Shown here in pieces: positions 2,365 through 59,070 of a stretch of 64,000 nt of DNA. Under the pieces are notes generated by a model. That model was not told where the DNA came from. It saw nothing but the letters and a program-made list of their open reading frames with translations, and searched no databases. This stretch comes from Haliotis rufescens (Eukaryota). Location of the stretch: NCBI RefSeq assembly GCF_023055435.1, contig NW_025963890.1, positions 62,558,001 to 62,622,000 of the forward strand, read 5' to 3'. The first letter of the stretch is position 1. Every line of letters starts with the position of its first letter. Made by a program: the position numbers and the translations under genes.

Positions 2365-2530
2365 TTAACACAAACCAGGGCTCCATACACCGCCGTAGTA
2401 TGAGGTGTTTGCTCCAGGAACAGGGGCATTGCTCTGTGCCGGAACTATCAGCAACTATAAATACAATGTGAGGTGCACATTCACAGATAACAAAAGTCAG
2501 AACAATAAATACAGCATTTTCGAGACTCAT
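2365..2530 (-). pseudogene. Arylsulfatase B-like pseudogene with ~1.3 kb internal deletion
   Basis: Signal peptide plus PHIVFIVAD (ATG at 2530) joined at ~2446 to the last ~26 codons (VPAQSNAPVPGAN..YYGGVWSPGLC*). Upstream 2575-2970 parallels the upstream of the 8350-9798 copy. Confidence 0.9.
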
Positions 2531-2971
2531 TTTGCGTCTGCTCAGTGTCGTACATTGTGCTTCTATATAAGGAGAACCTAAATCTTGCATTCCTTACAGA
2601 AAGATAAACTACAATATGGCATTTTAGTTCGAGATGAGGACCACTTTATGAACGTCGCTTTAAGCAAAAATTAATTTCCATTATCTGTAAGATAAGATTC
2701 ATAGATTACATTAAAAACATATTTTCATCGAATTGGAAGAACTCAATCAGCCATGGTATTTTTTTACCTGTAGGAACTATACGTGCTTGTATCTCATATA
2801 TGTTCAATGCCATACATAAACACTGAACACATTGAAGTCATTTATAATGCAATTTGTAGTCCCTGCTTTGTTAATGAGCTTCATTCGTCTTGGGTGTACT
2901 GCAATGCGTGTTGGTCCTGTAAGACCTGTGCAAAGTTGAAATCAGTACCCCACCATTGGATTTCTTGTTTA

Positions 2972-3663
2972 AGAATACTCATGAATATTTATTAAAAGGT
3001 GAGGATTCTCCGTTCTGCATCCTTTGTGATGAAAGAATCACGGTCAAGCATGACCTGATTAGATTTTTCCATCACAAGGTTTGACTATTTCAACGTTTCA
3101 TCGCTCAAGGATCTTTTTAACAATATCAGCTCTCATTTAGTGATTGGTTTATTAAAAGAAATAGAATTATTAAGTAATTTTGAAACATATGTTTTGTAAT
3201 TTTTAATCGTAGAATATATGTTACTTCAACTTTGGCTTAATTTGTCAATAATTGCCAACAGCTGAAGGGATGATGTAAACCCGGCTGGGGTCCATGCAGG
3301 TAGCAAAAGTACTGTAAGTCCCCATGGGCCCTTGTATGTAACTTTGGTTGCTGGTGATCACTAGCCAATTTTGATAATGTATTGTTCCGAATATTCACAG
3401 TTTTATGGTAACACACTAGTCATAAATCTATACCTGTTATAATCTAGTGCTTTTACTGTCCTTCGTCGACAGATTTTATGGATTTCATTCTCATGGTTTC
3501 ACGAAAGTGATAAACGTCTGAGACCTGCATCACTTCGGGTATTCCCCCCACATAAAGCTGACACGCCGTGGTATAACTCGGTATTGTTCAAAGCAGTGTT
3601 AGTCACGATATCGATATGGCTGAAATATTGCCGATGTAACTTAAAATTTTAACTCACTCACTC
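2972..3663 (+). mobile_element. 3' fragment of the I/Nimb-type LINE (C-terminal CCHC region, 3' UTR and tail)
   Basis: KGEDSPFCILCDERITVKH matches 20994-21176. 3' UTR matches 21360-21610. Tail GATATGGCTGAAATATTGCCGATG..AACTCACTCACTC. Confidence 0.8.
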
Positions 3664-3809
3664 TTTTCATCCCACATTATCATGGGGTCCGCGTTAAGAT
3701 GAATCTTTCGAAAATGTTTTCAAAATCTTACAGCAGATAAAATGCCACCTGGGGTGACTTACCTTGACATCAATTCCTAACAAGGTATCATTGCCACATT
3801 CTTTGGTTA

Positions 3810-8349: not shown

Positions 8350-9798
8350 TTAACACCAGCCTGGACTCCATACACCGCCGTAGTATTCAGGGTTTGCTGC
8401 AGGAACACCAGCATTGCTCTGCGCCGGAACACGGGACTTCTTCCAGTTCTCCAGCCTCTTCTTCATCATGTCCACTAACTCAGGGTACGTCGCTGAGAGG
8501 TCGAAATGTTCAGTTGGATCTGCAGTAATGTTGTACAGCATGAAGGGAGGGAAGGTTTGGTTATCAGCTTCATAGACATCTTCGTCAATTCCCACATGTG
8601 GCAAAGGAGCCCAGCCATTGTGATCACCCGGACTCCCTTGCATGAGCTTGAGATCTCCGTACCTTACGGCAGCTGCTTCCCGCTCGTCATATATGTTGTA
8701 GACGAACTCATTCCGTTTGGTGGGCCCACCATTGATGAGCATGTCGTACTGGCTGACTCCGTCCATGTTGGGGTCTGTGTTCTCTCCACCAGCCAGCTCC
8801 ACAAACGTCGGGTACCAGTCCACAGCATGCATCATTCCAGTGTTAAGATAACCCGTCTTCTTCAGAAGGGTTTTACTGTAGATGAATCCTGTGCCTTTCG
8901 TTCCCCCTTCCCACAGAGTATTTTTAGCTCCTCGTAAAGGCAAGTTATTAGCAGCAAGAAATGTAGGACCGCCATTATCGGTTGTAAAGACTAACAAAAG
9001 ATTGTCCATGAGACCTTTGCCTTCTAAAGCCTTCGTAATGTTTCCCACAGCTTCATCCAAAGCACTCACCATTCCACAATAGATTCTTCTCTTTATGTTT
9101 TCTATGTTCTTGTACATGTTTTCATATTTAGCTGGAACTTGATGAGGTGTATGAACAGACTGGAATGGAAGGTATAGATAAAGTGGTTTACTTTTGTCGT
9201 GGTTTGTAATGATTTCAACAGCCCTGTTAGCAAACACATTTGCAGAATAGGTCCCATTGGCGTCTCTATATGCAGTCTTGTTGAGGTGAAAATCCAGTCC
9301 TACTTCACCTTTGACTTCCTTCATCTTTCTCAGGTGGGTAAAATAGTCCTCTGAACCAGTGTAAAATCCAAGATAGGAGTCAAAGCCTCTCTCTGTGGGT
9401 GTATATTTCCAGTTACAGAATCCAAGATGCCACTTCCCAACCATATGAGCAGCATAGCCGAGTTGTTTCAGTTTCTGTGGAATTGTTATTAGATTGGCTG
9501 GCATGTATTTCGCTGCGTCGTCGTCGATAACGCCATCCTGTAGTCCAGTGTGATAGGGGAAATATCCTGACATGAAGCAGTTTCTGGAGGGTGAACACAA
9601 AGGCTGTACGTAAGAAGAGTTGAGGATGACTCCAGCTTTGGCCAGTCTGTCCAGGTTAGGGGTGATCATTTGAGGGTTCCGAAACCCAACATCATTCCAG
9701 CCGAGGTCATCCGCGACAATGAATACAATGTGAGGTTTCTCAGCATACGCACAAGTGAAAAAAATCAGAACAAGGAACACAGTTGTTAAAAGATTCAT
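8350..9798 (-). CDS. ARSB: Arylsulfatase B-like sulfatase, intronless, signal peptide, 482 aa (copy A)
   Basis: Signal peptide MNLLTTVFLVLIFFTCAYA; PHIVFIVADDLG; FGly motif CSPSR; GKWHLG; SVH; TTDNGG; PLRGAKxTLWEGG. Start set at the ATG (9798) aligned with all paralogues. Confidence 0.95.
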   Translation of the reverse strand: MNLLTTVFLVLIFFTCAYAEKPHIVFIVADDLGWNDVGFRNPQMITPNLDRLAKAGVILNSSYVQPLCSPSRNCFMSGYFPYHTGLQDGVIDDDAAKYMPANLITIPQKLKQLGYAAHMVGKWHLGFCNWKYTPTERGFDSYLGFYTGSEDYFTHLRKMKEVKGEVGLDFHLNKTAYRDANGTYSANVFANRAVEIITNHDKSKPLYLYLPFQSVHTPHQVPAKYENMYKNIENIKRRIYCGMVSALDEAVGNITKALEGKGLMDNLLLVFTTDNGGPTFLAANNLPLRGAKNTLWEGGTKGTGFIYSKTLLKKTGYLNTGMMHAVDWYPTFVELAGGENTDPNMDGVSQYDMLINGGPTKRNEFVYNIYDEREAAAVRYGDLKLMQGSPGDHNGWAPLPHVGIDEDVYEADNQTFPPFMLYNITADPTEHFDLSATYPELVDMMKKRLENWKKSRVPAQSNAGVPAANPEYYGGVWSPGWC

Positions 9799-13039: not shown

Positions 13040-13618
13040 TATATAATTTTCTTGTGCATGTTTTCATATTTAGGTGGAACAAGAGGTGCATGTACAGACT
13101 GGAATGGAAGGTACAGATAAAGTGGCTTACTGTTGTCAAGGTTCTCAATGATTTCAACAGCTCTGTCCGCAAAAATATTTGCAGAAGTGCACCAGAGTAA
13201 TATCCAAGATAGGAATCAAAGCCTCTCTCTGTGGGTGTATACCTCTCGTTACAGAATCCAAGATGCCACTTTCCAACCATGTGAGCATCATAACCAAGTT
13301 GTTTCAGTGTTTGTGGTATTGTTGTTAGATTGGCCGGCAGGTGTTTTGCTGTATTGACCAATATAACGCCATCTTGTAGTCCGGTGTAATAAGGGAAATA
13401 TCCCGACATGTCGAGCATAAAGGCTGGACGTAAGAAGAGTTGAGGATGACTCCAGCTTTGGCCAGTCTGTCCAAGTAAGGGGTGATCATTTGAGGGTTCC
13501 GAAATCCAACATCATTCAAGCCGAGGTCATCAGCGACTATAAATACAATGTGAGGTTTATCTGCACATTCACAGATAAGAAACGTCAGAAGAATAAAGAC
13601 AGCTCTTTGGAGATTCAT
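13040..13618 (-). pseudogene. Arylsulfatase B-like pseudogene, 5' half only
   Basis: MNLQRAVFILL..KPHIVFIVADDLGLND. A frameshifting deletion destroys CSPSR (reads LCSTC), a second deletion follows YSGA, and homology stops after KYENM. Confidence 0.92.
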
Positions 13619-14951
13619 TTTGCTTCTGCTCAATGTGGTACATTGTGCTTCCATTTAAAGGTTTCCAATAGATAACGTGATTTTCGTGACCTGCTTAGAG
13701 CATGAACTCTCTCTGTGTGAATATAAAAAAAAATTACTCTCAGCATTTCAACGACATTTGTTGTTGCCTAGCCACGGACTGTCTTACATTTTATGGGTGT
13801 TTCAAAGCAACAACTTCCACAAGTGCACTGTTAATGCTGTACAGGACACAAATCCTCAAACATTATTTCGTATATGTTGTAGAGGTACTGACCTCACTAT
13901 GGAGAAGAACAGCTGCCACTGGTACCTTTTCGTCAACTGTCAATATTACTTCACTACTGGCAGTATGATCGGTGTGTCTTCACAGAGTACATACAATTCA
14001 CAGGGGCACTTATTGCTCTTTCTTATACAAGGGTGTTTTAGAGTGAGTGAGTAGAGTTTACCACGCCGCTAAATAATTTGTGTCAGTTTGATGGGAGAAT
14101 AAAACCCTATGTAAAATAGGAAACACACTGGCTGGGTACGATGTTGATAAGCTACCAATAGTAATTCTCAGGGTGAATCTGCGATATGATCCCACGATCG
14201 TTATTTCGAGGCACGACAAAGGGACGTAAAGTTTGCCTTATTTGGCCAAATGTGATCCTGTCAAGAAAATGGGCATTTCTTCTCAAATGTAGACCTAGAC
14301 TAACACAATGTTAAATCTGTTAAATTAAGCCTGCATCCAGTTTGAAAACAGTAGTATAGAAGTGAGTAAGTGAGGTTTTACGCCACTTTTAGCACTATTC
14401 TAGTAATTGCAAGGCACTGGACACCAGAAATGGGCATCATAAATGTGTGGAATAAAACCGAATCTTTAAGGTGAAACTTTAACAACCTTATATTAGCAGA
14501 AAGAATTTGAGACAATTGTAATTAATACCATGTGGATTCTAAAAAAACGTGAATGATTGTGTGTGATTTTAGTACAGCAAAGTAAACACAAACAAACTCA
14601 GGACGAAGCTGAGATTCGAGACCACGTCCCCTTGGTTGTTTTGCAACTTTATTGTTTGTCTAATAAACTCCGTCCGGCTATATGACGGCCATCTGTAAAT
14701 AGTTGAGTCTGGACCAGACAATTCCATGATTGATATCATCATTAGCAACCAACTCAGCAGTATGGCGAACAGATCCTATTAGTCGCCTCTTTCACCATTC
14801 ATGAGTTCCTGAAGACCAATTCTAACAGGATCTTCACGGGGATGCACTTATCCATACATTCATCTATTATTTTTATTTATCTTCAAGGAATCACTAACAT
14901 GTTCGGATGCGAAAATTATATCTTGGGTGTACAATCTCAGCGTACTTTGTA

Positions 14952-16394
14952 TCAACACCACCCAGGACTCCATACACCGCCGTAGTATTTTGGGTTCGCT
15001 CTTGGTACTGGAGTAGGATCCTGGGCTGGGACACGGGTTTTCTTCCAGTTGTCCAACCTCTTCTTCATCATGTCCACTAGCTCAGGGTACTTGGCTGAGA
15101 GGTCGAAATGTTCAGTTGGATCTGCAGTAATGTTGTAGAGCATGAAGGGAGGGAAGGTTTGGTTATCAGCTTCATAGACACCTTCGTCAATTCCCAGATG
15201 TGGCAAAGGAGCCCAACCATTGTGAATTCCTGGACTTCCTTGCATGAGTTTGAGATCTCCATACCGTATTGCAGCTGCTTCCCGCTCATCGTAGATGTTG
15301 TAGACGAACTCATTCCGTTTGGAGGGTCCACCATTGATGAGCATGTCGTACTGACTGACTCCGTCCATGTTTGGGTCTGTGTTCTCTCCACCAGCCAGCT
15401 CCACAAACGTCGGGTACCAGTCCACAGCATGCATCATTCCAGTGTTGAGGTAGCCTGTCTTCTTCAGAAGGGTTTTACTGTAGATAAATCCTGTGCCTTT
15501 TGTTCCCCCTTCCCACAGAGTATTTTTGGCTCCTCGTAAAGGCAAGTTATTAGCAGCACCAAATGTGGGACCACCATTATCGGTTGTAAAGACTAGCAAA
15601 AGATTGTCCATGAGGCCTTTGTCTTCTAAAGCCTTCGTAATGTTTCCCACAGCTTCATCCAAAGCACTAACCATTCCACAATATACCCTTCTGTTTTCGG
15701 TTTCTATATTCTTGTACATGTTTTCATATTTAGGTGGCACTTGAAGAGGTCCATGTACAGACTGGAATGGAAGGTATAGATAAAGTGGCTTACTGTTGTC
15801 GTGGTTCTCAATGGTACTAACAGCTCTGTCTGCAAACACATTTGCAGAATAGGTCTCATTGGCGCTTCTGTTGATGGTCAAGTTGAAGCGAAAATCCAGC
15901 CCCACTTCATCGCTACTTTCCTGTCTTACGTGAGTATAGTAGTCCTCCATTCCAGAGTAGTATCCAAGATAGGAGTCAAAGCCTCTCTCTGTGGGTGTAT
16001 ACTTCTCGTTACAGAAGCCAAGATGCCACTTTCCAACCATGTGAGCATCATAGCCAAGTTGTTTCAATTTCTGTGGTATAGTTGTTAGATTGACCGGCAG
16101 GTGTTTTGCTGAGTTGACCAATACGACGCCATCTTGAAGTCCAGTGTGATAGGGGAAATATCCCGACATGAAGCAGTTTCTGGAGGGCGAGCACAGTGGC
16201 TGAACATATGAAGAGTTGAGGATGACTCCAGCTTTGGCAAGTCTGTCCAGGTTAGGGGTGATCATTTGAGGATTTATATATCCAACATCGTTCCAGCCGA
16301 GGTCATCAGCAACTATAAATATTATGTGAGGTTTCTCTGCACATTCACAGTAAACGAAAGTGAGAACAATAAAGACAGCTCTTTGGAGAGTCAT
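14952..16394 (-). CDS. ARSB: Arylsulfatase B-like sulfatase, intronless, signal peptide, 480 aa (copy B)
   Basis: Uninterrupted ORF from ATG 16394 (MTLQRAVFIVL). All S1 sulfatase motifs intact. Confidence 0.95.
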   Translation of the reverse strand: MTLQRAVFIVLTFVYCECAEKPHIIFIVADDLGWNDVGYINPQMITPNLDRLAKAGVILNSSYVQPLCSPSRNCFMSGYFPYHTGLQDGVVLVNSAKHLPVNLTTIPQKLKQLGYDAHMVGKWHLGFCNEKYTPTERGFDSYLGYYSGMEDYYTHVRQESSDEVGLDFRFNLTINRSANETYSANVFADRAVSTIENHDNSKPLYLYLPFQSVHGPLQVPPKYENMYKNIETENRRVYCGMVSALDEAVGNITKALEDKGLMDNLLLVFTTDNGGPTFGAANNLPLRGAKNTLWEGGTKGTGFIYSKTLLKKTGYLNTGMMHAVDWYPTFVELAGGENTDPNMDGVSQYDMLINGGPSKRNEFVYNIYDEREAAAIRYGDLKLMQGSPGIHNGWAPLPHLGIDEGVYEADNQTFPPFMLYNITADPTEHFDLSAKYPELVDMMKKRLDNWKKTRVPAQDPTPVPRANPKYYGGVWSPGWC

Positions 16395-16427
16395 TTTGCT
16401 TCTGCTCAATGTGGTCTATTGTGCTTC

Positions 16428-16464
16428 TATTTATAGGTTTCCAATAGATAAGGCACGTCGTGAC
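16428..16464 (-). promoter_or_regulatory. Putative core promoter of copy B: TATA box, CCAAT, GATA site (AGATAA) and CGTGAC motif
   Basis: TATAAATA 34-41 nt upstream of the ATG, AGATAA at 16446-51, CGTGAC at 16459-64. Equivalent motifs at the same spacing in the other copies (e.g. 23638-74, 44211-47, 52119-55, 59104-40, ~9831-67). Confidence 0.55.
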
Positions 16465-20141: not shown

Positions 20142-20206
<65 letters not shown>

Positions 20207-28904: not shown

Positions 28905-29066
28905 NNNNNNNNNNNNNNNNNNNNNNNNNNNNNNNNNNNNNNNNNNNNNNNNNNNNNNNNNNNNNNNNNNNNNNNNNNNNNNNNNNNNNNNNNNNNNNNN
29001 NNNNNNNNNNNNNNNNNNNNNNNNNNNNNNNNNNNNNNNNNNNNNNNNNNNNNNNNNNNNNNNNNN
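28905..29066. other. Assembly gap (N run)
   Basis: Run of N. Confidence 1.
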
Positions 29067-37975: not shown

Positions 37976-40189
37976 TCCATAGTAATCCGTGCAAATAAAA
38001 CTGAGTAATGAAATAGAAGTCTGACATGCCAGTTAAAAGATAGAGTGTTGCAGCTTCTGATTTCATAGATCTTCAAGAAGGGTTATCAATAATGGGATGG
38101 GTGATGAGTTCAACTGCATACGCTGTGATTAACAATGATGCTCCGAGTCAATACATTTTGTCAAATGTATGACATGTATTACGTGAATGAACATATTGTT
38201 TATACTCGTCTATGTTTTTGACGGACAAAATAATTTACATGCTCGGTAAAACTGAGGACGGGCATCATTGTGTGTTTCCGTGCTTTGTTCAGGTGAACAA
38301 TTGACTTGTCCATGCATGTTTTGTGACGGGTGCCACTTGTGTGGCAGGATACGCTCACCATTGGAGGACTTGAACCACTTCGGATTTTTATCCCACATCA
38401 GTCTGATACACCATGATATAACTGAAATACTGAAATACTGTACAGTTGAAAATGATGTTTAATGCGATTACCGTAGTGTGTTACTGCAACTGTTCATATT
38501 TTGTGCAGTGATGTTATGTAATATGTAAAAGAAAGCATATTCAATTATCCAATTGATTTAAATAGAATATACTTGCGTCAGTGTATTTTATTAACGCCCC
38601 AAATCGTAATTTAAACACATAAAATAACAGATCACGCATGGTGCCTTGACCTACTACTAGATTTAACGGGCCACCCCGGAATAAAATAGTTCCCCCAAAG
38701 CGAGGAACATATGTTTTAGTATGTTTACAAGAAATATATTTCACAACAATATCCTCATTAGATGAGAAGATCTTTTACAGAATTACCTCAGTAAGTCAAT
38801 TACAATGACAGAGCGTCGTAATACATTTACATCAAGTACAATACGTCAAAATGGCCGACACGATAAACGTGACGGGAGATATTTTCGAAGTTGTTAATTA
38901 ACCTGTGGCTATTTCAAGCCTTTGGCATCACTGATCAATTGGCAGATCATTGAAAGGTGATTGTGAAGATGTGTCAAATAGATACTAAGGTAAATTCATA
39001 GATTTCTGTAAATTGTCACTGCGACAGTTTGGATTTTTTTTCGTGTTTTTTCTCTCTGGGATGGGTTGCAGCGAGGGTATCCTTAAATGGGCTTGCAACC
39101 ACGCTTCTGTATGAATTCGTACCAGGGAATTCCAAGGGTTTTCCCCAGGAATGTGGAAGTAGTCAGTGTTTACGCCTTTTTAAGAATACAGTCACGTGAA
39201 GAACGTCATGTGACCGACCTCGCGTCCAAGTCGTATAACTTGTAAACTTCACATTTAAAAATAAGTTATTGTTATAACCAAATGAAACACAACCCATTAT
39301 CCGATAGGGGTAACTGTACATAGCCGTTACCACAATAAACTTAGTAACATTGTTTGGTTTGACTTCTTGGCGCGTGTCTGAATTCCATTAACATGTAACA
39401 TATCCTAAAACTAGCTTATCAGCAAATCTCGCTGCACTGCGCGCGACAGATACAAGAGCAAGGCATGCCAGAAATACGAAACCTAAAGCTTCCGAAAGGA
39501 AGCCTTGGACATCACGTGCGTCGGGGGACCAGCGCCATCTGATTGGCCGTTAACAGTTGTACAAGGCGGAGTAAAAAGCATCGTTTTTCCGTCCATTTTA
39601 CGCTTGAAAAACTCGACCCTTTTCTGGACACTTTCTAGACGCTGACCAATTAATCAATTTTAATGAATTTTTAGTCGTTTTTCCGTCCAATGACCATATA
39701 CGGAAAAAACGACGTTTTCGTGTTTGCAGTGTGTATCACTTGGTCAAACGTGATCCCTTGAAGACACAATTACAAAACGGGCATTTCTTCTCAAATTGTC
39801 ATTAGACCAACAAAATTCCAAAATCTGTGAGAATTTGTCTGTCCCCAGTTTAAAACCCAGAAACCGGTAGTATAGTAGTGAGTAAGTGAGTGAACAAGTG
39901 AGATTTTACGCAGCTTTTAGCAGTATTCCAGGAGTAGCACGTTTAGTCGCCTCTTACACCGAACATGGGTTACTGAAGACGGGTCATATCATATCATATA
40001 TCTAGACTCATATCTAGACTCAACAACACATGTCAGTATGTATCTATGATCTTTAATCAATCGTTCAAGGAATCACCAACATCTTCGTATATCAACACTG
40101 AATTAGCATGCAAGAAAATCAGAAAATCAGAAAATCAAACGCAAAATATGAAGCGTGGGTCTTTAATGTGTAGCCCAGCATACTCTGTG

Positions 40190-40483
40190 TCAACACCACC
40201 CAGGACTCCATACACCACCATAGTATTTTGGGTTCGCGTTGGGAACGGGACAATTGCTCTGTGCCGGAACACGGGTCTTCTTCCAGGTTTCCATCCTTTC
40301 CTTCATCATGTCCACTAACTCAGGGTACTTCGCTGAGAGGTCGAAGTGTTCAGTTGGATCTGCAGTAGTATGAAGGGAGGGAACATATGGTTATCAGTTT
40401 GATATACATCTTCGTCTCCCATATGTGGCAAATGAGCCCAACCATTATGATCCCCCGGACTCCCTTGTATGAGTTTTAGATCT
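40190..40483 (-). pseudogene. Arylsulfatase B-like 3' remnant (last ~95 codons)
   Basis: DLKLIQGSPGDHNGWA..TADPTEHFDLSAKYPELVDMMKE..ANPKYYGGVWSPGWC* with small deletions. Upstream part is replaced at a SINE fragment. Confidence 0.92.
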
Positions 40484-41419
40484 TCTCTTACACGACTAAC
40501 ATGGGTTGCTGAAGACCTATTCTACCCCCGATGTTCACAGGGCTAACTGTTTAATGATTGTTATAAGAGCCGACCACACGTATGCTGGGTATTGTCAGGC
40601 ATTCTGGTGGAATAAAAACTGATGTACAGCTGCAGTTTAAGCCCCAACACTTTTCTCAAGTTTGCTTTGTATTGATCTTTTATCAACCATATGTTACCAT
40701 ATTTAGCCACTCCCTATTATTTGCTTGCTGATAAGTGTAGGTCAAATATTTCCTCTGAGGCTCGGCAGAAATCAAAAAGTAATTAAATATTAAACAAATG
40801 TGACCTATTCAATAATATATCATCAGATGATCTTCCTTCAGAGACAATCTGAAGCGTAATGTTTCATGATAACTGATGTCATCATGTTAATGTTAATTTA
40901 ATAAATCGTCCTATGGGTTTTTTTCCATTTGGTGGAATGTTTGGAAAACGACATATTGATGTCTTGTTGCCAAACAACAAAGTGTCATGAGCACTTCAAA
41001 CTTCTTCCTATGATATTTGAATGTGTGTTAAACGATTTGAGCTTAAAAGAAACGAATTACATGGCGGCTACTCACACTGTCTTCACTTTACTAGTGGTCC
41101 CATTAACTGTGTTCTCTCTATCACTTCATTACTGCCACTACTTCTAGGAATATTGCACTGTGAAGATCCGCGTTAGAATTGGACTTCACCAACCCATGTT
41201 TGTCGTTAGAGGCGACTAACGGGATCGGGTTGATCTATGTTATCGTATCCCAATTGCGTAGATCAGTGCTCATGATGTCAATCACTGGGCCGTCTGTTCC
41301 AAACTCGATTATTTACAGACCGCCGTAATATAGCTGGAATATTGCTGAGTGTGGCGTTTGGCAACAGACAAATCTAGGAATAGGGCTATAATAATAGGAC
41401 ACCTTCTCCTATTACAACA

Positions 41420-41963: not shown

Positions 41964-42187
41964 TCAGCACCAGCCAGAACTTCATGCGTCGCTATAGTAT
42001 TTGGGGTTCGCAGTTGGAACAACAGAAGGGTACAATTGCCTGTTCTTATTGTGAAAGCCAATGGACTTACAGATGATACAGTTTACACTAAAAGAAAAAT
42101 TCAATGACGAGCGTTACAACGTAATGCTGTTTGATTTGCCCGGCAGGTGCTTTGGTGCATTGACCATTATAACGCTATCTTGCAGTC
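41964..42187 (-). pseudogene. Old, heavily eroded arylsulfatase remnant
   Basis: 41964-42020 translates VPTANPKYYSDA*SSGWC*. 42121-42187 matches the LQD..VN.KHLP.N segment. Confidence 0.7.
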
Positions 42188-42734: not shown

Positions 42735-44177
42735 TCAACACCACCCAGGGTTCCATACATCGCCGTAGTATTTTGGGTTCGCTCTGGGAACATGAGTAGG
42801 ATCCTGGGCCGGGACACGGGTTTTCTTCCAGTTCTCCAGCCTCTTCTTCATCATGTCCACTAGCTCAGGGTACTTAGCTGAGAGGTCGAAGTGTTCAGTT
42901 GGATCTGCAGTAATGTTATACAGCATGAAGGGAGGAAACGTTTGGTTGTCAGCTTCATACACACGTTCATCAACTCCCAGATGTGGCAATGGAGCCCAAC
43001 CATTGTGATCTCCCGGACTCCCTTGCATGAGTTTGAGATCTCCGTACCTTATTGCAGCTGCTTCCCGCTCGTCATAGATGTTGTAGACGAACTCATTCCG
43101 TTTGGTGGATCCGCCATTGATGAGCATGTCGTACTGACTGACTCCGTCCATGTTGGGGTCTGTGCTCTCTCCACCAGCCAACTCCACCAATGTCGGATAC
43201 CAGTCCACAGCATGCATCATTCCAGTATTGAGGTAGCCCGTCTTCTTCAGAAGGGTTTTACTGTAGATGAATCCAGTGCCTTTCGTTCCCCCTTCCCACA
43301 GTGTATTTTTAGCTCCTCGTAAAGGCAAGTTATTAGAAGCTCTATACGTAGGACCACCATTGTCGGTTGTAAAGACCAACAACAGATTGTCCATGAGACC
43401 TTTGTCTTCTAATGCCTTGGTGATATTCCCAACAGCTTCGTCTAAGGCACTCACCATTCCACAATAAATCCTTCTGCTTTTGGTTTCTATGTTCTTGTAC
43501 ATGTTTTCATATTTAGGTGGAACTTCAAGAGGTGCATGTACAGACTGAAATGGAAGGTACAGATAAAGTGGCTTACTGTTGTCGTGGTTCTCAATGATTT
43601 CAACAGCCCGGCTCGCAAATACATATGCAGAATAGGTCCCATTTGCGTCTCTGTACACAGTATTGTTGTAGCGAAAATCCAGCCCCAATTCATTTTTATT
43701 TCCCTCTGACATGTGAGTAAAATACTCCTCCGCACCAGTGTAATATCCAAGATAGGAATCAAAGCCTCTCTCTGTGGGTGTATATTTCCAGTTACAGAAG
43801 CCAAGATGCCACTTCCCAACCATGTGAGCATCATAGCCGAGTTGTTTCAGTTTCTGTGGTATTGTTGTTAGATTGGCTGGCAGGTGTTTCGCTGAATTTG
43901 ACGAAACAACGCCATCTTGTAGTCCAGTGTGATAGGGGAAATATCCCGACATGAAGCAGTTTCTGGAGGGCGAACACAAAGGCTGAACGTAAGAAGAGTT
44001 GAGAATGACTCCCGCTTTGGCCAGTCTGTCCAGGTTGGGGGTGATCATTTGAGGGTTCCGAAATCCAACATCGTTCCAGCCGAGGTCATCAGCGACTATA
44101 AATATAATGTGAGGTTTCTCTGCACATTCACAGAAAACAAAAGTCAGAACAATACATAGAGCTTTTCGGAGACTCAT
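42735..44177 (-). CDS. ARSB: Arylsulfatase B-like sulfatase, intronless, signal peptide, 480 aa (copy D)
   Basis: Uninterrupted ORF MSLRKALCIVL..WNPGWC. All catalytic motifs intact. Confidence 0.95.
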   Translation of the reverse strand: MSLRKALCIVLTFVFCECAEKPHIIFIVADDLGWNDVGFRNPQMITPNLDRLAKAGVILNSSYVQPLCSPSRNCFMSGYFPYHTGLQDGVVSSNSAKHLPANLTTIPQKLKQLGYDAHMVGKWHLGFCNWKYTPTERGFDSYLGYYTGAEEYFTHMSEGNKNELGLDFRYNNTVYRDANGTYSAYVFASRAVEIIENHDNSKPLYLYLPFQSVHAPLEVPPKYENMYKNIETKSRRIYCGMVSALDEAVGNITKALEDKGLMDNLLLVFTTDNGGPTYRASNNLPLRGAKNTLWEGGTKGTGFIYSKTLLKKTGYLNTGMMHAVDWYPTLVELAGGESTDPNMDGVSQYDMLINGGSTKRNEFVYNIYDEREAAAIRYGDLKLMQGSPGDHNGWAPLPHLGVDERVYEADNQTFPPFMLYNITADPTEHFDLSAKYPELVDMMKKRLENWKKTRVPAQDPTHVPRANPKYYGDVWNPGWC

Positions 44178-45239
44178 TTTGCTTCTGCTCGATGTGGTAC
44201 ATTTTACTTCTTTTTAAAGGTTTCCAATAGATAACGCGCATCGTGACAAGCCTAGATCTTGCCAAATTTGTCCGTGTGATTACCAGGTAGATAGTGTCAA
44301 AATATATACCACAGAATATGTGCAGATGTTGTAAACATGAATTTTTCACAATACATATCAGTGAAACCATGGCACCTATGATACATGATATTCTTCAAGC
44401 TAAGCTTCTTAACAATATTGGCAGAACTTGACAATCTTGTTGCTATTGAACATGTGGCTAAACTACATTTTCAAACATCCTTGTATGTCATATTTACTTT
44501 AAAATTCACTGTACATATGTCTATTTTGTTATGCGAGCATATAACCCAAATACACAATACCACCAAAAACATATGTGGAAGAAATAATTACACTTTTTCT
44601 TGACTTGACTTTACACACCTATCATATTGTATATTGTGCATATGAACGAGGCCTACAAAATAGTTCTACATCTCAAGGTGTTCATGTCACACATTTATAG
44701 CTGCACCTCCTTTCCTTCTGCGTCATTGCCTTTTATCACGGTATTTATGTTTTGATAAGCTTGAAATATACTCACCGCCAAAAGACACACGAACCACAGT
44801 TCACACAACATACCCGTATGTTCGTTTGTGCATCCAGCCAATCTAAGATCTCTTGAATCTGAGTAATTCTTCATATACAACCAACATGTATAGTATTCGC
44901 GTGTCTTCAATCAGTGACTATACAGTAGTTTGGAATAACTGTGAACAGTGTTGGGTGGGTTGTCCTGTGTTGTGGTACGTATCTAACATCAAACCGGGGA
45001 AAGAGAGTAAAAGGAGACATTGGGCATCTGCAACCTGCAGAAGAAAGAATATGTATTCTTAATTTTAAAATGAGTGAAGATGAATATCCTGTAATATCCA
45101 AATTGCCTGTTAATTATGCAATTATGGCAAAACTCATTCTTTGAATTATTTTAAAGTTTTACCTGACGGGTTCTCCGCACCTTTTCACTCGCAAGAGTTG
45201 GATCAGGTGGTCAGTCTGATGACTGGTCATCGTACCTTG

Positions 45240-50642: not shown

Positions 50643-52085
50643 TCAACACCAGCCTGGACTCCAGGCGCCGCCAAAGTATTTGGGGTTTGCGTTGGGAACG
50701 GGAGAACCGTCCTGCGATGGGACATGTGTCTTCTTCCAGTTCTCCAACCTCTTCTTCATCATGTCCACTAACTCGGGGTACTTCGCTGAAAGGTCGAAGT
50801 GTTCAGTTGGATCTGAAGTAATGTTGTATAGCATGAAGGGAGGGAATGTTTGGTTATCAGCTTGAGAGACGCCTTCATCAATTCCCAGATGTGGCAAAGG
50901 AGCCCAACCATTGTGATCTCCTGGATTTCCTTGCATGAGTTTGAGATCTCCGTACCGTATTGCAGCTGCTTCCCGCTCATCATAGATGTTGTAGACGAAC
51001 TCATTCCGTTTGGTGGATCCGCCATTGATGAGCATGTCATACTGACTAACTCCGTCCATTTTGGGATCTGTGTTCTCTCCACCAGCCAGCTCCACCAAAG
51101 TCGGGTACCAGTCCACAGCATGCATCATTCCAGTGTTGAGGTAGCCTGTCTTCTTCAGAAGTGTTTTACTGTAGATGAAAGCCGTGCCTTTCGTTCCCCC
51201 TTCCCACAGAGTATTCTTGGCTCCTCGTAAAGGCAAGTTATTAGCAGCAACAAATGTAGGACCGCCATTATCGGTTGTAAAGACTAACAATAGATTGTCC
51301 ATGAGGCCTTTGTCTTCTAAAGCCTTCGTAATGTTTCCCACAGCTTCGTCTAACGAACTCGCCATTCCACAATAGACCCTTCTGTTTAGATTTTCTATGT
51401 TCTTGTACAGGTTTTCATATTTTGAAGGAACTTCTAGAGGTATATGTACAGACTGGAATGGAAGGTATAGATAAAGTGGTTTACTATTGTCGTGGTTCTC
51501 GATGATTTCAACAGCTCTGTCCGTAAACACATTTGCAGAATAGGTTCCATTTGCGTTGCCATAGACAGTCTTATTGAAGTGAAAATCCAGGCCCACGTCA
51601 CCTCCTCGATCCTGTGACATGTGAGTAAAATACTCTTCATCACCGGAGTAATAGCCAAGATAGGTATCAAAGCCTCTCTCTGTGGGTGTATATTTCCAGT
51701 TACAGAAGCCAAGATGCCACTTCCCAACCATGTGAGCATCATAGCCGAGTTGTTTCAGTCTTTGTGGTATAGTTGTTAGGTTGGCTGGCAAGAATCTCGC
51801 TGCGTCTACCGGAATACCGCTGTCTTGTAGTCCAGTGTGATAGGGGAAATATCCTGACATGAAGCAGCTTCTGGAGGGCGAGCACATAGGCTGAACGTAT
51901 GAAGAGTTGAGGACGACTCCAGCTTTGGCCAGTCTGTCCAGGTTAGGGGTGATCATTTGAGGGTTCCGAAATCCAACATCGTTCCAGCCGAGGTCATCAG
52001 CGACTATAAATATAATGTGAGGTTTCTCTGCACACTCACAGATAACAAAAGTCAGAACAATAAGGACAGCTCCTCCGAGACTCAT
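50643..52085 (-). CDS. ARSB: Arylsulfatase B-like sulfatase, intronless, signal peptide, 480 aa (copy E)
   Basis: Start set at the aligned ATG 52085 (MSLGGAVLIVL). Motifs intact (MCSPSR, GKWH, SVH, TDNGG, AKNT). Confidence 0.95.
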   Translation of the reverse strand: MSLGGAVLIVLTFVICECAEKPHIIFIVADDLGWNDVGFRNPQMITPNLDRLAKAGVVLNSSYVQPMCSPSRSCFMSGYFPYHTGLQDSGIPVDAARFLPANLTTIPQRLKQLGYDAHMVGKWHLGFCNWKYTPTERGFDTYLGYYSGDEEYFTHMSQDRGGDVGLDFHFNKTVYGNANGTYSANVFTDRAVEIIENHDNSKPLYLYLPFQSVHIPLEVPSKYENLYKNIENLNRRVYCGMASSLDEAVGNITKALEDKGLMDNLLLVFTTDNGGPTFVAANNLPLRGAKNTLWEGGTKGTAFIYSKTLLKKTGYLNTGMMHAVDWYPTLVELAGGENTDPKMDGVSQYDMLINGGSTKRNEFVYNIYDEREAAAIRYGDLKLMQGNPGDHNGWAPLPHLGIDEGVSQADNQTFPPFMLYNITSDPTEHFDLSAKYPELVDMMKKRLENWKKTHVPSQDGSPVPNANPKYFGGAWSPGWC

Positions 52086-55750: not shown

Positions 55751-55818
<68 letters not shown>

Positions 55819-56513
55819 TGGCCACGCCGTGGGGAAAGTTATTCGGATGCTTGTGCTGTTGAGAGAGACTCGTGGGGTGGTCCGAGCATCATGGTGTGGG
55901 ATGGAATTGGTCTTGCACAGAGGGTTGGCCCTGTGGCCCAGGGAGAGGCCATGGTGTCACAGCAGCTCGGTACATAGATCCAGTCTTGAGACCACATACC
56001 GCAACCACGAGTTTTAGCATGATAACGCCCATGCCCACACTGCGAGAGAAACAAGAGACTTACTCCAGCAGAATGGAATCAGAACCATGTCGTGGCCTGC
56101 CCTCAGTCCTGATTTAAATCCCATTGAGCACCTGTGGGACGAGATTCAAAAACGGCTGAATGACGTCCGACCAAGTCCGACAACTGCAGCTGAACTGCGT
56201 CAGGCGTTCCTCAGAGTGATGGCTCAAATGCCTATGGCCTTCATCAACCGCCTCTTCCATTCCATGTATCGACGTTGCACGGCAGTCATCAATGCACATG
56301 GCAGACACACGAGATACTCACTTGTGATGCCATTTTCTCAGAGACTAGTGTTGTGTTTCACGTTAAGAACATTTGGCACTTTAATTTCCACATTGATGAT
56401 CAGTTTTGCCAAGTTGCATCTTTTTAATATGTCTCAAAGTATGTTTACAGTGTTTGGCAAAATAAGGTTTCTCATATATCTATCCATGGTGACGTTTCTT
56501 TTGCGATTCAGTA
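54964..56513 (+). mobile_element. Tc1-family (DD34E) transposon, transposase disabled
   Basis: 26-bp TIRs TACTGAACCGCAAAAGAAACGTCACC. Transposase ~55260-56320: HTH (RQDRQI..ISADTVRRRL), VLFSDES, HDNA-(34)-E in SPDLNPIEHLW. Frameshifts and a (GA)n insertion. Empty site AAAATACGTTTCA at ~7780. Confidence 0.95.
55736..55815. repeat. (GA)n microsatellite inside the transposase
   Basis: GA run just after the FSDESRYC coding segment. Confidence 0.98.
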
Positions 56514-56753
56514 TACGTTTCAGGTAAGGTTATTACATCAAAGGGAAGCTTTGTCATACCTTGTCCTTTGTGTTTGTTCACTGTTGAATGTATATGTTTC
56601 ACAAAACTTGTAACCCAATGCGTCTGTGTCTGGTTCGATTTGATTTTAAAATAAATAGTTTTCCCTATTTGAAGACAAATGAGGTTGATGCGGTAAGGAC
56701 TCAATTTGACAAGTAGGTGTGACAACCCGTATTTTGAACATCAATGTAGTGTT

Positions 56754-57582
56754 AATAGAGAATACTACACTTATTCTCGATAGCGAGGTCAGATACCATA
56801 GAAAGTGCACGAGATTCGAAAGATTGCTATCTAACGAGAATGAGTGTGGTATCTTATTTATTACCTAAATATATGTGTATATATTAAAATATGTATTTAA
56901 GTGTAGATACATAACGACTTTCTTACGTTAACAGACCAAACTGAAACCGGTTGTAAATCTGGTTGGGCATGTGTAAATCTCACAGCGGCGTTTTTGCGCT
57001 AGAGATGAACGTTCATTCATGAACTAACGATTTCGGAAGCAATGTCACAAAATACGCTTCGAATGAGGACACTGATGACACAACCGGAGCATCCAACGTA
57101 AGTCAAAGATATCTGTCCAGATAGTTTAGCTGACTTCATGTCACCACGCTTAACATTAACACGTTAAATCAAATTGAAGTCGCGAAAGTAATCGGGTGCG
57201 TCACGCTCGATAGGGACCCTTGATAAAGATATATCGGAAGACGTACATTGCATATGGATACAGCTCGATTATATAATGTCTGCAGTAGTTCTATGCATGA
57301 CTAATATTGAATGCAAAGCGAGTTGATGCGTGTACCTTGTTTGGTTTGATAAAGAGTGTGTAAATGTCTGTCGCTTTCATGAGATTCCTTCAGTTCTGCC
57401 TTGTAGTTAAACAAGTGAATGACGTCTCGTGTTTTTTTTATGAATGAAAAAAGTAGTTCCGGTGTGACAGAGGTCACGGTTATCCAATCAAAAGGAATAA
57501 AACGAGGACAACCGTGTACGACACACGTGTGACGTACGGATTTAATGTGTAACCATCTCTATCTTCACCACGTGGGTAATAA
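56754..57582. mobile_element. ~830-bp insertion in the 3' flank of copy F, possibly a Crypton-like non-autonomous element
   Basis: Absent from the paralogous 3' flank (~8300-8320). No ordinary TIRs, but offset inverted pairs: ACACTTATTCTCG/CGAGAATGAGTGT near the left end, and TTATTACC (~56858) with terminal GGTAATAA. Confidence 0.5.
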
Positions 57583-57622
57583 ACGTATTTATTTGTGAGG
57601 GAGTGTCTGTTTGAAATAGTCA

Positions 57623-59070
57623 TTAACACCAGCCTGGACTCCATACACCGCCGTAGTATTTTGGGTTCGCTGCAGGAATACTAGCATTGTTCTGCGCCGG
57701 AACACGGGACTTCTTCCAGTTCTCCAGTCTCTTCTTCATCATATCCACTAACTCAGGGTACGTGGCTGAGAGGTCGAAATGTTCAGTTGGATCTGCAGTT
57801 ATGTTGTATAGCATGAAGGGAGGGAACTTCTGGTTATCAGCTTGATAAACACGTTCATCAATTCCCAGATGTGGCAAAGGAGCCCAACCATTGTGATCTC
57901 CCGGACTTCCTTGTATGAGTTTGAGATCTCCGTACCGTATTGCAGCTGCTTCCTCCTCGTCATAGATGTTGTAGACGAACTCATTCCGTTTGGTGGGTCC
58001 GCCATTGATGAGCATGTCGTACTGACTGACTCCGTCCATGTTGGGGTCTGTGTTCTCTCCACCAGCTAGCTCCACCAAAGTCGGGTTCCAGTCCACAGCA
58101 TGCATCATTCCAATGTTAAGGTAGCCCGTCTTCTTCAGAAGGGTTTTACTGTAGATGAACCCAGTTCCCTTCGTTCCCCCTTCCCAGAGAGTAGCTTTAG
58201 CTCCTCGTCAAGGCAAGTTATTAGAAGCTTTATACGTAGGACCACCATTATCGGTTGTAAAGACCAACAATAGGTTGTCCATGAGACCTTTGTCTTCTAA
58301 TGCCTTAGTGATATTCCCAACAGCTTCGTCTAACGCACTCACCATTCCACAATAGACCCTTCTGCGTTTGGTTTCTATGTTCTTGTACATGTTTTCATAT
58401 TTAGGTGGAACTTCCAGAGGTTCATGTACAGACTGGAATGGAAGGTATAGATAAAGTGGCTTACTGTTGTTGTGGCCCTCAATGAATTCAACAGCCCTGT
58501 TAGCAAACACATACGCAGAGTAGGTCCCATTGGCCTCTCTATAGGCAATCTTGTTTAAGTGAAAATCCAATCCGACTTCACCTTGGGGATCCTTTAACAT
58601 GTGAGTAAAATAGTCCTCTGCACCAGAGTAATGACCAAGATAGGTGTCAAAGCCTCTCTCTGTGGGTGTATATTTCCAGTTACAGAAGCCAAGGTGCCAT
58701 TTCCCAACCATGTGAGCATCATAGCCAAGTTGTTTCAGTTTCTGTGGTAGTGTTGTCAGGTTGGCTGGCAGGAATTTTGCTGCGTCTGTCTGAATAACGC
58801 CATCTTGAAGCCCGGTGTGATAGGGGAAATAACACGACATAAAACAGTTTCGGGAGGGCGAACACAAAGGCTGGACGTAAGAAGAGTTGAGGATGACTCC
58901 AGCTTTGGCCAGTCTGTCCAGGTTAGGGGTGATCATTTGAGGGTTCCTATATCCAACATCGTTCCAGCCGAGGTCATCAGCGACAATAAATACAATATTA
59001 GGTTTCTCCATACATTCACAGATAACAAAAGTCATAAAAGAATAATACATACAGCTTTTTGGAGACCCAT
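57623..59070 (-). pseudogene. Full-length, recently disabled arylsulfatase B-like gene (copy F)
   Basis: A 4-nt insertion in the signal peptide gives MGLQKAVCIILL*. TTA>TGA nonsense at 58208-10 in NNLP[L]RG. The rest is colinear and in frame with the paralogues. Confidence 0.9.

What the first reader, a model, noticed from the sequence alone, without database searches (positions are those of the whole stretch)
2365..59070. Expanded tandem array of intronless, signal-peptide-bearing ARSB-like sulfatases in birth-and-death evolution
Seen: ten same-strand copies in ~57 kb (5 intact, 1 freshly disabled, 4 remnants). Each intact copy is a single uninterrupted ORF with a signal peptide and CSPSR motif. 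Known: vertebrate ARSB is a single multi-exon lysosomal GalNAc-4-sulfatase; S1 sulfatases need FGE/SUMF1 activation. Inference: an intron-free, possibly retroposed founder was amplified into a lineage-specific enzyme battery. If the host is an algivorous gastropod, a plausible role is host-encoded digestive desulfation of algal polysaccharides (carrageenan, agaran, fucoidan, ulvan) or sulfated phenolics, which is usually credited to gut bacteria.
Basis: partly seen in the sequence, partly recalled or inferred. Interest (0 to 1): 0.8.

Follow-up and report, generated by a model that had tools for sequence, protein, structure and literature searches.

The report
Abalone intronless ARSB-like sulfatase gene array
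The window is a real slice of a 261-kb tandem array of intron-free arylsulfatase-B-like genes in red abalone. It most likely encodes the long-known abalone digestive sulfatases, so this is a large new example of a known kind of mollusc gene expansion, not a new system.

Summary
On the minus strand lie five intact single-ORF sulfatase genes, one fresh pseudogene and four remnants.

- **Protein family:** the proteins are ARSB-like S1 sulfatases. Human 4-sulfatase 1FSU matches at E 9e-112, and the predicted fold at TM 0.90. All 11 catalytic and metal residues are invariant.
- **Genome and extent:** contig lengths identify Haliotis rufescens. The window is only part of a 25-locus, 261-kb array. 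The genome holds about 40 full-length single-frame ARSB-like loci.
- **Origin:** the single-frame genes form one Haliotis-only clade (99/97 support). That clade sits among multi-exon paralogues that share about 9-10 intron positions, so a single retrocopied founder is inferred.
- **Selection:** copies are old (dS 0.19-0.45) and under purifying selection (omega about 0.2). A few loop sites are hypervariable, and there is one clear gene-conversion tract.
- **Expression:** RNA-like public runs cover only the coding body. The tissue is unknown.

A digestive role on algal sulfated polysaccharides is plausible but untested. Abalone hepatopancreas sulfatases and mollusc ARSB expansions are already published.

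The scan noted neighbouring parts of this array before, and it also noted IDS-like intronless arrays elsewhere in this genome.

The parts
2368..2570 (-). Remnant R1: promoter-proximal part and the first 33 codons joined to the last 26 codons, so the middle of the gene is deleted
   Evidence: tblastn and blastn
8350..9798 (-). Copy A: intact 482-aa ARSB-like sulfatase gene with a variant signal peptide (MNLLTTVFLVLIFFTCAYA); core promoter about 9799-9870
13045..13723 (-). Remnant R2: promoter plus codons 1-230, with frameshifts and an internal deletion
   Evidence: The RNA-like contigs that touch it continue into intact-paralogue sequence (loose ends)
14952..16394 (-). Copy B: intact 480-aa gene; core promoter about 16395-16466
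   Evidence: RNA-like runs X1 and X2 cover 14864-16439 and give zero depth at 16440-16833
22162..23604 (-). Copy C: intact 480-aa gene, sister of B (dS 0.19)
22844..22943 (-). Gene-conversion tract in copy C: 100 of 100 nt identical to copy F (58305-58404) but only 86% identical to sister copy B. It covers the variable residues 233-234
28905..29066 (.). Assembly gap 1 in intergenic DNA. It is flanked by an 80-84% identical direct repeat (28626-28822 and 29412-29705)
31567..31746 (.). Assembly gap 2 in intergenic DNA; no sulfatase homology nearby
40186..40506 (-). Remnant R3: last 100 codons or so, with a frameshift
41967..42185 (-). Remnant R4: weak, degenerate traces of codons 86-130 and 460-480
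   Evidence: E 0.002-0.05
42735..44177 (-). Copy D: intact 480-aa gene, used as the reference copy
44178..44247 (-). Core promoter of copy D, with a counterpart before every copy of this sub-clade: invariant GTCACG, then GTTATCT (a GATA motif on the other strand), then a TATA-like box starting 41 nt (39 in some copies) before the ATG
   Evidence: alignment of 15 upstream regions
50643..52085 (-). Copy E: intact 480-aa gene
57623..59072 (-). Copy F: recent pseudogene. It has a TGA at 58208-58210 and a 1-nt frameshift near 59037-59042. Homology upstream of it ends about 59141

Best explanation
The window holds 57 kb of a 261-kb head-to-tail array (25 loci) in the red abalone genome. The genes are compact and lack coding introns. 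Each is about 1.6 kb, with a TATA-like box about 40 nt before the ATG and a poly(A) signal 6-182 nt after the stop.

Each gene encodes a 480-aa formylglycine-dependent sulfatase of the arylsulfatase-B subfamily (SulfAtlas S1_2). The protein has an N-terminal signal peptide and several N-glycosylation sequons.

Shown:
- The fold and all catalytic and metal residues are those of human 4-sulfatase.
- FGE genes are present in the genome.
- The copies are old and kept by purifying selection.
- Amino-acid change is concentrated in a few surface loops and in residues next in sequence to catalytic residues.
- Copies are gained, lost and patched by gene conversion.
- The family is transcribed.

Inferred:
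- All the single-frame genes descend from one retrocopied mRNA of a multi-exon ARSB-like gene in the abalone (or vetigastropod) stem lineage.
- That founder acquired a compact promoter and was multiplied by unequal crossing-over and segmental duplication.

Most likely function, inferred and not tested: these are the heterogeneous sulfatases long purified from abalone hepatopancreas. They would be made in the secretory/lysosomal pathway of digestive-gland cells. Each paralogue would remove sulfate esters at a somewhat different position or sugar context of dietary algal polysaccharides (fucoidan, carrageenan/agaran, ulvan), so that the host's glycosidases can proceed.
For: **Family**
- Pfam PF00884 plus PF14707.
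- The best solved relative is human ARSB 1FSU at E 9e-112. Next come bacterial S1_19 carrageenan 4-sulfatases at about 1e-55 to 1e-57.
- The AlphaFold model has pLDDT 92.4. Its TM-score is 0.90 to 1FSU and 0.77-0.80 to S1_19 enzymes.
- Eleven catalytic and metal residues are invariant in 39 copies.
- FGE domain hits lie at two loci.

**Extent**
- There are 24 full-length single-frame loci, or 25 counting a broken copy, on C112 between 62.47 and 62.73 Mb. About 40 exist genome-wide.

**Origin**
- The careful tree gives the single-frame genes of H. rufescens, H. rubra and H. asinina as one exclusive clade, UFboot 99 / SH-aLRT 97.
- The multi-exon paralogues P0024 (13 or more exons) and P0070 share about 9-10 intron positions, none of which is present here.

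**Selection**
- Median omega is 0.20 and median dS 0.34.
- Hypervariable patches lie at aa 89-98 and 149-177, and at single sites 215, 233-234, 279, 370, 390 and others. All fall in loops of the model, except 233-234 at the start of a helix.
- Three sites exceed the neutral expectation after correction.

**Turnover**
- One pseudogene and four remnants lie in the window.
- Young duplicate pairs have dS 0.013 and 0.047.
- A 100-nt conversion tract links copies C and F.

**Transcription**
- Runs X1 and X2 cover only the coding body of copy B and give zero depth in unique flanks that DNA-like runs cover evenly. No joint lies inside the gene.
- The promoter is conserved.

**Function context from papers**
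- Fucoidan-degrading enzymes from abalone hepatopancreas, 1967 (cited in PMC6315715).
- Sulfatases purified from H. rufescens showing heterogeneity, 1991 (cited in PMC5519703).
- Four ARSB proteins in the scallop hepatopancreas proteome (PMC5159873).
- Dominant abalone gut bacteria are poor in sulfatases (PMC5870069).
Against: - No tissue, substrate or protein-level evidence ties these particular genes to digestion.
- The RNA status of X1 and X2 is the tool's guess. Their contigs are short (68-298 nt), so they cannot be assigned to one paralogue.
- Intron status of relatives in other molluscs could not be examined. The age and uniqueness of the intron loss are therefore bounded only by the tree.
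- No poly(A) tail or target-site duplication of a founder was sought, and none is expected to survive.
- ARSB-like arrays and many transcripts also occur in filter feeders and carnivores, so expansion alone does not point to algae.
- The site-wise selection test is crude: parsimony counts, one global dS, and no correction for recombination.
- Closeness of the variable sites to the pocket rests on sequence adjacency and loop location. No distances were measured.
Confidence: 0.6

Rival explanations
1. The copies act on small sulfated dietary or endogenous molecules rather than on polysaccharides. Candidates are sulfated phenolics and phlorotannin conjugates, steroid or saponin sulfates. The role would be detoxification or sulfate scavenging, as in the moth glucosinolate sulfatase that arose from an ARSB duplicate.
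For: The SulfAtlas paper places the Plutella glucosinolate sulfatase next to ARSB and derives it from an ARSB duplication (PMC5066984). Mollusc arylsulfatases are reported to cleave saponin sulfates, and they are numerous in a carnivorous snail (PMC5519703). Hypervariable pocket-side loops would fit many small substrates equally well.
Against: The nearest relatives of known specificity, ARSB and the S1_19 enzymes, are carbohydrate 4-sulfatases. Classical abalone hepatopancreas preparations desulfate fucoidan (cited in PMC6315715).
Confidence: 0.15
2. They are ordinary lysosomal enzymes for turnover of the animal's own glycosaminoglycans, multiplied for dosage only.
For: The closest characterised enzyme is lysosomal ARSB. 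The signal peptide and N-glycan sequons suit lysosomal targeting. Overall omega is 0.2.
Against: Roughly forty copies with diversifying loop sites are hard to explain by dosage alone. Multi-exon ARSB-like genes with orthologues in other gastropods remain in the genome and are better candidates for the housekeeping role.
Confidence: 0.1
3. The main role is developmental or in another tissue, for example remodelling of sulfated matrix or mucus at metamorphosis, in the mantle or in the foot.
For: The title of Spaulding and Morse 1991 reports changes in sulfatase synthesis during H. rufescens development (cited in PMC5519703). Arylsulfatase expression in mollusc and echinoderm larvae is cited in PMC6900098.
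Against: A rise at metamorphosis is also what a feeding enzyme would show. There is no tissue evidence either way here.
Confidence: 0.1
4. The array is an assembly or haplotype artefact, or bacterial DNA or a recent horizontal transfer.
For: Two assembly gaps lie inside the interval. The genes lack introns, as bacterial genes do.
Against: - Copies differ by dS 0.19-0.45.
- Independent DNA-like runs cover the unique flanks.
- The genes sit among LINE and other animal repeats.
- The proteins nest inside mollusc ARSB-like sequences and match human ARSB far better than any bacterial enzyme.
- An orthologous cluster lies on a 9.4-Mb H. rubra contig.
Confidence: 0.02

Closest known systems
Human arylsulfatase B / N-acetylgalactosamine-4-sulfatase (PDB 1FSU; SulfAtlas S1_2)
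   Same: About 41% identity. Fold TM-score 0.90. The CxPxR formylglycine motif and the same 11 catalytic and metal residues. Signal peptide and dependence on FGE.
   Different: No coding introns, whereas the vertebrate gene is multi-exon (own knowledge). Dozens of tandem copies instead of one gene. Hypervariable loops. The substrate is unknown and probably not only GalNAc-4-sulfate.
Mollusc hepatopancreas ARSB-like sulfatases (scallop Chlamys farreri: 7 genes, 4 in the proteome; Aplysia: 16 genes; PMC5159873)
   Same: The same protein family, duplicated in molluscs. The paper proposes that this helps molluscs adapt to diverse algal food.
   Different: The scale here is much larger: about 40 single-frame loci plus multi-exon arrays. 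The single-frame genes form one abalone-only clade with a shared compact promoter. That paper does not discuss gene structure.
Classical abalone sulfatase preparations (Thanassi and Nakada 1967; Spaulding and Morse 1991, H. rufescens)
   Same: The same species or genus. Those studies found multiple sulfatase forms in the hepatopancreas and fucoidan desulfation.
   Different: Those studies have no sequences. The link between these genes and those enzymes is inferred. The papers are not held in the library, so only titles and citations were seen.
Plutella xylostella glucosinolate sulfatase (S1_10)
   Same: A herbivore's diet-related enzyme that arose by duplication of an ARSB-like gene (PMC5066984).
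   Different: An insect, with few copies and a known small-molecule substrate.
Bacterial S1_19 carrageenan 4-sulfatases (PDB 6BIA, 6PRM/6PSM, 6B0J, 9HH2)
   Same: The second-best sequence and fold matches. They remove 4-sulfate from galactose in a red-algal polysaccharide.
   Different: Only 27-30% identity. They are bacterial and belong to a different subfamily. The resemblance hints at a possible activity and is not evidence for it.

Membership tests
Type I (formylglycine-dependent, S1) sulfatases | Sulfatase catalytic domain | tested here: met
   PF00884 at E 2e-54 over positions 1-300 of 301, plus PF14707 C-terminal region
Type I (formylglycine-dependent, S1) sulfatases | C-x-P-x-R motif for formylglycine, plus the metal and catalytic residues | tested here: met
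   D30 D31 C68 P70 R72 K122 H124 H214 D272 N273 K290 are invariant in 39 of 39 copies. They correspond to human ARSB D53 D54 C91 P93 R95 K145 H147 H242 D300 N301 K318 (ten of these are listed in PMC5159873, N301 by own knowledge)
Type I (formylglycine-dependent, S1) sulfatases | A formylglycine-generating enzyme available in the same organism | tested here: met
   PF03781 exon hits above the cut-off at C35:3.12 Mb and C390:2.91 Mb
Type I (formylglycine-dependent, S1) sulfatases | Sulfate-ester hydrolase activity | not testable with these tools
   Needs recombinant enzyme co-expressed with FGE
ARSB subfamily (SulfAtlas S1_2) | Closest to ARSB among characterised sulfatases, in sequence and in fold | tested here: met
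   1FSU at E 9e-112 against 1e-57 or weaker for all others. TM-score 0.90 against 0.80 or less
ARSB subfamily (SulfAtlas S1_2) | Placement inside the S1_2 clade of the SulfAtlas reference tree | not tested
   No SulfAtlas reference set was available. The trees here hold only metazoan ARSB-like sequences
ARSB subfamily (SulfAtlas S1_2) | GalNAc-4-sulfate specificity | not testable with these tools
   Enzyme assay needed
Retrogene-derived gene family | All parental introns are missing at once | tested here: met
   About 9-10 intron positions shared by two multi-exon paralogues are all absent. The promoter lies about 40 nt before the ATG, and RNA-like coverage stops there
Retrogene-derived gene family | The intronless copies are monophyletic and nested among intron-bearing relatives | tested here: met
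   Haliotis-only clade at 99/97. One divergent single-frame locus on C523 falls elsewhere in the tree and may be a separate event
Retrogene-derived gene family | Poly(A) remnant and target-site duplications around the founder; an identified parent gene | not tested
   The event predates the H. asinina / H. rufescens split, so these traces are expected to be erased. The sister lineage is unresolved in the tree
Secreted or lysosomal protein | N-terminal signal peptide | tested here: inconclusive
   The hydrophobic core has a mean Kyte-Doolittle value of 2.7-3.4 over 10 residues and is followed by small residues before EKPH. No dedicated signal-peptide predictor was available

The most novel reading that the evidence does not exclude
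Red abalone carries a host-encoded set of sulfatases on the scale of specialist algal-degrading bacteria. It has about 40 ARSB-like and at least 26 further single-frame sulfatase loci (one tested is iduronate-2-sulfatase-like), plus multi-exon arrays. Two different lysosomal sulfatase lineages would then have been independently retrocopied, amplified and diversified at pocket loops. If so, the animal itself, rather than its sulfatase-poor gut microbiota, performs most regio-specific desulfation of fucoidan, carrageenan/agaran and ulvan.
Probability: 0.3. Interest if true: 0.7.

Novelty: new member of a known kind. Interest (0 to 1): 0.5.

Why it matters
Sulfate esters block most glycosidases, so desulfation controls how much of a seaweed diet an animal can use.

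Work on the abalone gut microbiome found the dominant bacteria poor in sulfatases. It left open who degrades complex algal polysaccharides (PMC5870069). A catalogued host gene set makes that question testable with tissue RNA-seq, proteomics of hepatopancreas preparations, and recombinant assays.

The set has about 40 intact, selectively maintained paralogues that differ mainly in a few loops. It also offers a natural panel for mapping what determines specificity in S1_2 sulfatases. It is a possible source of regio-specific tools for fucoidan and carrageenan chemistry.

In evolutionary terms it is a clean example of a retrocopy that became the seed of a large tandem family. The same genome appears to hold a parallel case in an IDS-like lineage.

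Tried and rejected
- **The look-up of encoding contigs:** Whether relatives in other molluscs also lack introns stays open.
- **The look-up of sequencing runs:** gave no holder on record as RNA, and sample and tissue were coded. The single read-laying run used contig-only runs, so it shows no transcript starts, no strand and no expression levels.
- **Rfam gathering scan and ARAGORN:** nothing found in the window.
- **Paper searches:** no published description of an abalone sulfatase tandem expansion was found. Spaulding and Morse 1991 is not held.
- **Longest-identical-run shuffle test for gene conversion:** judged too liberal, because it ignores rate differences among sites. Only the C/F tract is offered as solid.
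- **Horizontal transfer and assembly artefact:** considered and rejected (see the rival explanations).
- **Big representative-protein search:** not used, because the family was already clear.
- **Spliced models:** Exons of the multi-exon paralogues were only mapped piece by piece with the database proteins P0024 and P0070.
- **N gaps:** not filled or looked up.
Full report
**What is in the window**

ORF listing and tblastn with one copy as query place all sulfatase homology on the minus strand. Five copies are uninterrupted from a conserved ATG to the stop:
- A, 8350-9798
- B, 14952-16394
- C, 22162-23604
- D, 42735-44177
- E, 50643-52085

They are 480-482 aa long and 85.5-89% identical to D in protein. 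They are 84-89% identical in DNA.

Copy F (57623-59072) aligns over its full length but is broken twice. A TGA at 58208-58210 replaces a Leu found in all 38 other aligned copies. One nucleotide is missing from the signal-peptide region near 59037-59042, so the ancestral ATG at 59070-59072 is out of frame.

There are four remnants:
- 2368-2570, with the ends of the gene joined and the middle deleted
- 13045-13723, the promoter plus codons 1-230 with frameshifts
- 40186-40506, the last 100 codons or so
- 41967-42185, a weak trace

**The assembly gaps**

The Ns at 28905-29066 and 31567-31746 lie in a 16.6-kb interval with no sulfatase homology. The only ORFs across them are read-through artefacts. 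Gap 1 is flanked by a direct repeat of about 80% identity and by low-complexity sequence.

Continuity across the gaps could not be tested, because the one read-laying run was used elsewhere. Their letters were not filled or looked up. No claim about gene integrity depends on the gaps. The copy number between C and the third remnant is a lower bound.

**What the proteins are**

Each protein has the Pfam Sulfatase domain and the aryl-sulfatase C-terminal region. The best solved relative is human N-acetylgalactosamine-4-sulfatase (ARSB, 1FSU) at E 9e-112. The next are bacterial S1_19 carrageenan 4-sulfatases at about 1e-55 to 1e-57.

An AlphaFold model of copy D, built from a 51-sequence alignment, has mean pLDDT 92.4. 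It superposes on 1FSU with TM-score 0.90, and on the S1_19 enzymes with 0.77-0.80.

The formylglycine cysteine in LCSPSR and ten further catalytic or metal residues are invariant in all 39 copies aligned. Ten of the eleven human equivalents are listed in PMC5159873; N301 is by own knowledge. SulfAtlas files ARSB under S1_2 (PMC5066984).

The genome has formylglycine-generating-enzyme exons at two loci.

Every copy begins with a Met followed by a hydrophobic stretch of about 19 residues just before the mature N-terminus, which is aligned to ARSB. Each copy carries five to eight N-glycosylation sequons. No dedicated signal-peptide predictor was available.

**Whose genome, and how far the array goes**

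The word search returns Haliotis proteins first. The window's contig is 79,745,701 bases and a second contig is 1,078,605 bases. RefSeq already names such proteins "arylsulfatase B-like".

A six-frame search of the whole assembly shows that the window is only a slice. Between 62.47 and 62.73 Mb of this chromosome there are 25 loci over 261 kb:
- 18 belong to the window's sub-clade: 15 intact, 2 with a single TGA and 1 broken.
- 7 belong to a sub-clade about 72% identical to D.

Further single-frame clusters lie on C615 (6 full-length), C13 (6), C24 (2), C157 (1) and C523 (1). That makes about 40 full-length single-frame loci, 37 of them uninterrupted.

**Origin**

The same search shows ARSB-like genes that match exon by exon.
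- P0024 on C556, with 13 or more exons over about 27 kb
- P0070 on C35, one member of a multi-exon array

In the coordinates of copy D, their exon boundaries fall at these residues:
- P0024: about 33, 70, 87, 123, 159, 187, 217, 239, 272, 324, 340, 377, 425
- P0070: about 68, 87, 185, 219, 240, 271, 319, 342, 376, 423

About nine to ten positions are therefore shared, and the array genes have none of them.

A careful maximum-likelihood tree (LG+C20 PMSF, 67 proteins) puts every single-frame gene of H. rufescens sampled there into one exclusive clade, together with their H. rubra and H. asinina relatives. Support is ultrafast bootstrap 99 and SH-aLRT 97. The clade is nested among gastropod, bivalve and chiton sequences, and the C35-type multi-exon genes lie further out (an earlier quick tree is).

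The simplest reading is one mRNA-derived copy in the abalone or vetigastropod stem lineage, followed by DNA-level amplification. This is an inference, for two reasons. No founder hallmarks were sought.

**How the copies evolve**

Among 15 intact copies of the window's sub-clade, pairwise dS has a median of 0.34 and omega a median of 0.20 (range 0.14-0.33). Window pairs have dS 0.19-0.45. The copies are thus old and kept by purifying selection, which also rules out haplotype or collapse artefacts.

Two pairs are young. L001/L003 has dS 0.013 and L002/L004 has dS 0.047, which points to a recent two-gene segmental duplication.

Most of the protein is nearly frozen, with window omega of 0.02-0.1. 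Change piles up in a few places:
- residues 89-98
- residues 149-177, where omega is about 1
- single sites 215 (next to catalytic His214), 233-234, 279 (six residues after Asn273), 370, 390, 405 and 460-462

In the model these all lie in loops, except 233-234 at the start of a helix.

A crude site test compared parsimony counts with the tree-wide synonymous rate. It puts sites 149, 390 and 92 above neutrality after correction, and seven more at nominal p below 0.01. The test ignores recombination, and no distances to the pocket were measured.

Gene conversion does occur. Copy C at 22844-22943 is identical over 100 nt to copy F, but only 86% identical to its sister B. The tract covers the variable residues 233-234.

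Homology between copies stops within a few bases of the stop codon. It runs 70-510 bp upstream of the ATG.

**Gene anatomy and transcription**

All 15 aligned upstream regions share three elements:
- an invariant GTCACG
- eight bases later, GTTATCT (a GATA motif on the opposite strand)
- a TATA-like box starting 41 nt (39 in some copies) before the ATG

Poly(A) signals lie 6-182 nt after the stop. Other sub-clades have their own upstream blocks, several with GATA and TATA motifs. The GATA motif hints at gut-type regulation and is not evidence for it.

Contigs of four public runs were laid on 12500-18400:
- X15 and X17 cover all 30 bins at even single-copy depth, so they behave as DNA.
- X1 and X2 cover the coding body of copy B (14864-16439) at word depths of hundreds to thousands. 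They give zero depth in the unique flanks at 16440-16833, 13485-13878 and 17425-18015.

That is the pattern of transcripts with a very short 5' UTR and no upstream exon. No joint lies inside the gene.

There are caveats. The RNA label of X1 and X2 is the tool's guess. The contigs are 68-298 nt long and 96-100% identical, so paralogues cannot be told apart. The tissue is coded.

**Comparison with what is known**

- Host sulfatases of marine gastropods are classical. Fucoidan-degrading enzymes from abalone hepatopancreas date from 1967 (Thanassi and Nakada, cited in PMC6315715 and PMC8484680).
- Sulfatases purified from H. rufescens itself showed heterogeneity and developmental change in 1991 (Spaulding and Morse, cited in PMC5519703; the paper is not held).
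- The scallop hepatopancreas proteome holds four of seven ARSB-like proteins. That paper counts 16 ARSB genes in Aplysia and proposes adaptation to diverse algae (PMC5159873).
- A carnivorous triton snail has 30-36 arylsulfatase transcripts (PMC5519703).
- Neighbouring locus tags show tandem ARSB-like genes in unionid mussels, Littorina and Batillaria.

Expansion and arraying are therefore not special to algivores.

Three things were not found in the searchable literature:
- the abalone-only intronless clade
- its size
- its shared compact promoter

A study of the abalone gut microbiota found the dominant bacteria poor in sulfatases (PMC5870069). This leaves room for a host contribution.

**A wider pattern, seen in passing**

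A Pfam-domain search of the assembly lists 69 full-domain matches at E of 1e-30 or better. Twenty-six of them are not ARSB-like: 15 on C35 at 27.55-27.74 Mb, and others on C90, C346, C1, C42, C534 and C556. The four that were fetched are single ORFs of 495-525 aa with hydrophobic N-termini. The one tested matches human iduronate-2-sulfatase at E 6e-90.

Earlier notes of this scan describe these IDS-like arrays and the neighbouring parts of the present array. I checked the neighbours, the C/F conversion tract and one IDS-like locus myself.

**Verdict**

The digestive function is plausible, has old biochemical precedent, and is untested for these genes.

This is a large, well-preserved new member of a known kind (mollusc ARSB-like expansions), not a new system. 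It is of moderate interest. The interest would rise if the paralogues prove to have distinct specificities for algal polysaccharides.

Noticed in passing
G000 C35:27.55-27.74 Mb, C90:13.99-14.01 Mb, C346:2.03-2.05 Mb and others (loci L041-L044): A second set of at least 26 single-frame sulfatase loci of 495-580 aa with hydrophobic N-termini. The one tested (L043) matches human iduronate-2-sulfatase 5FQL at E 6e-90. This looks like a parallel intronless expansion in a different S1 subfamily.
   Followed up: partly
G000 C35:35.19-35.57 Mb; also C334:60.93-60.98 Mb and C24:17.23-17.27 Mb: Tandem arrays of multi-exon ARSB-like genes, with at least 12 last exons on C35. The family therefore expanded in its intron-bearing form as well.
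   Followed up: partly
window 59490-63282 (+): A LINE-type retrotransposon with a 410-aa first ORF, an endonuclease (PF14529) and a reverse transcriptase (PF00078). It starts about 350 bp beyond the point where pseudogene F loses upstream homology (about 59141). An insertion may have removed F's distal upstream region.
   Followed up: partly
window 16834-17227 and 18016-18400: A very high-copy repeat, with word depth of 10^5-10^6 in the DNA-like runs and many contig joints between the two copies. It sits upstream of copy B. ARAGORN finds no tRNA gene and Rfam finds nothing.
   Followed up: partly
window 55257-55862 (+): An ORF with a weak homeodomain-like HTH_32 match, ending in a long (GA)n-type repeat that encodes RERERE. 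It is probably a decayed DNA-transposon fragment.
   Followed up: no
window 9742-9798 (copy A) and L012; L005 and L007: Three different signal-peptide and upstream modules are attached to otherwise similar bodies: MNLLTTVFLVLIFFTCAYA, the common M.L.RAVFI.LTFV.CECA, and MNFISALCFI..L..CECA. The upstream DNA beyond about -110 differs in step with them, which suggests exchange of 5' ends.
   Followed up: partly
G000 C112:62472912-62501131 (L001-L004): A recent two-gene segmental duplication of about 19 kb: L001/L003 have dS 0.013 and L002/L004 have dS 0.047.
   Followed up: partly
G000 C523:1077930-1079324 (L036): A lone, very divergent single-frame ARSB-like locus of 510 aa on a long branch. 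Its N-terminus looks like a signal anchor. It falls outside the abalone intronless clade and is possibly a separate retrocopy.
   Followed up: no
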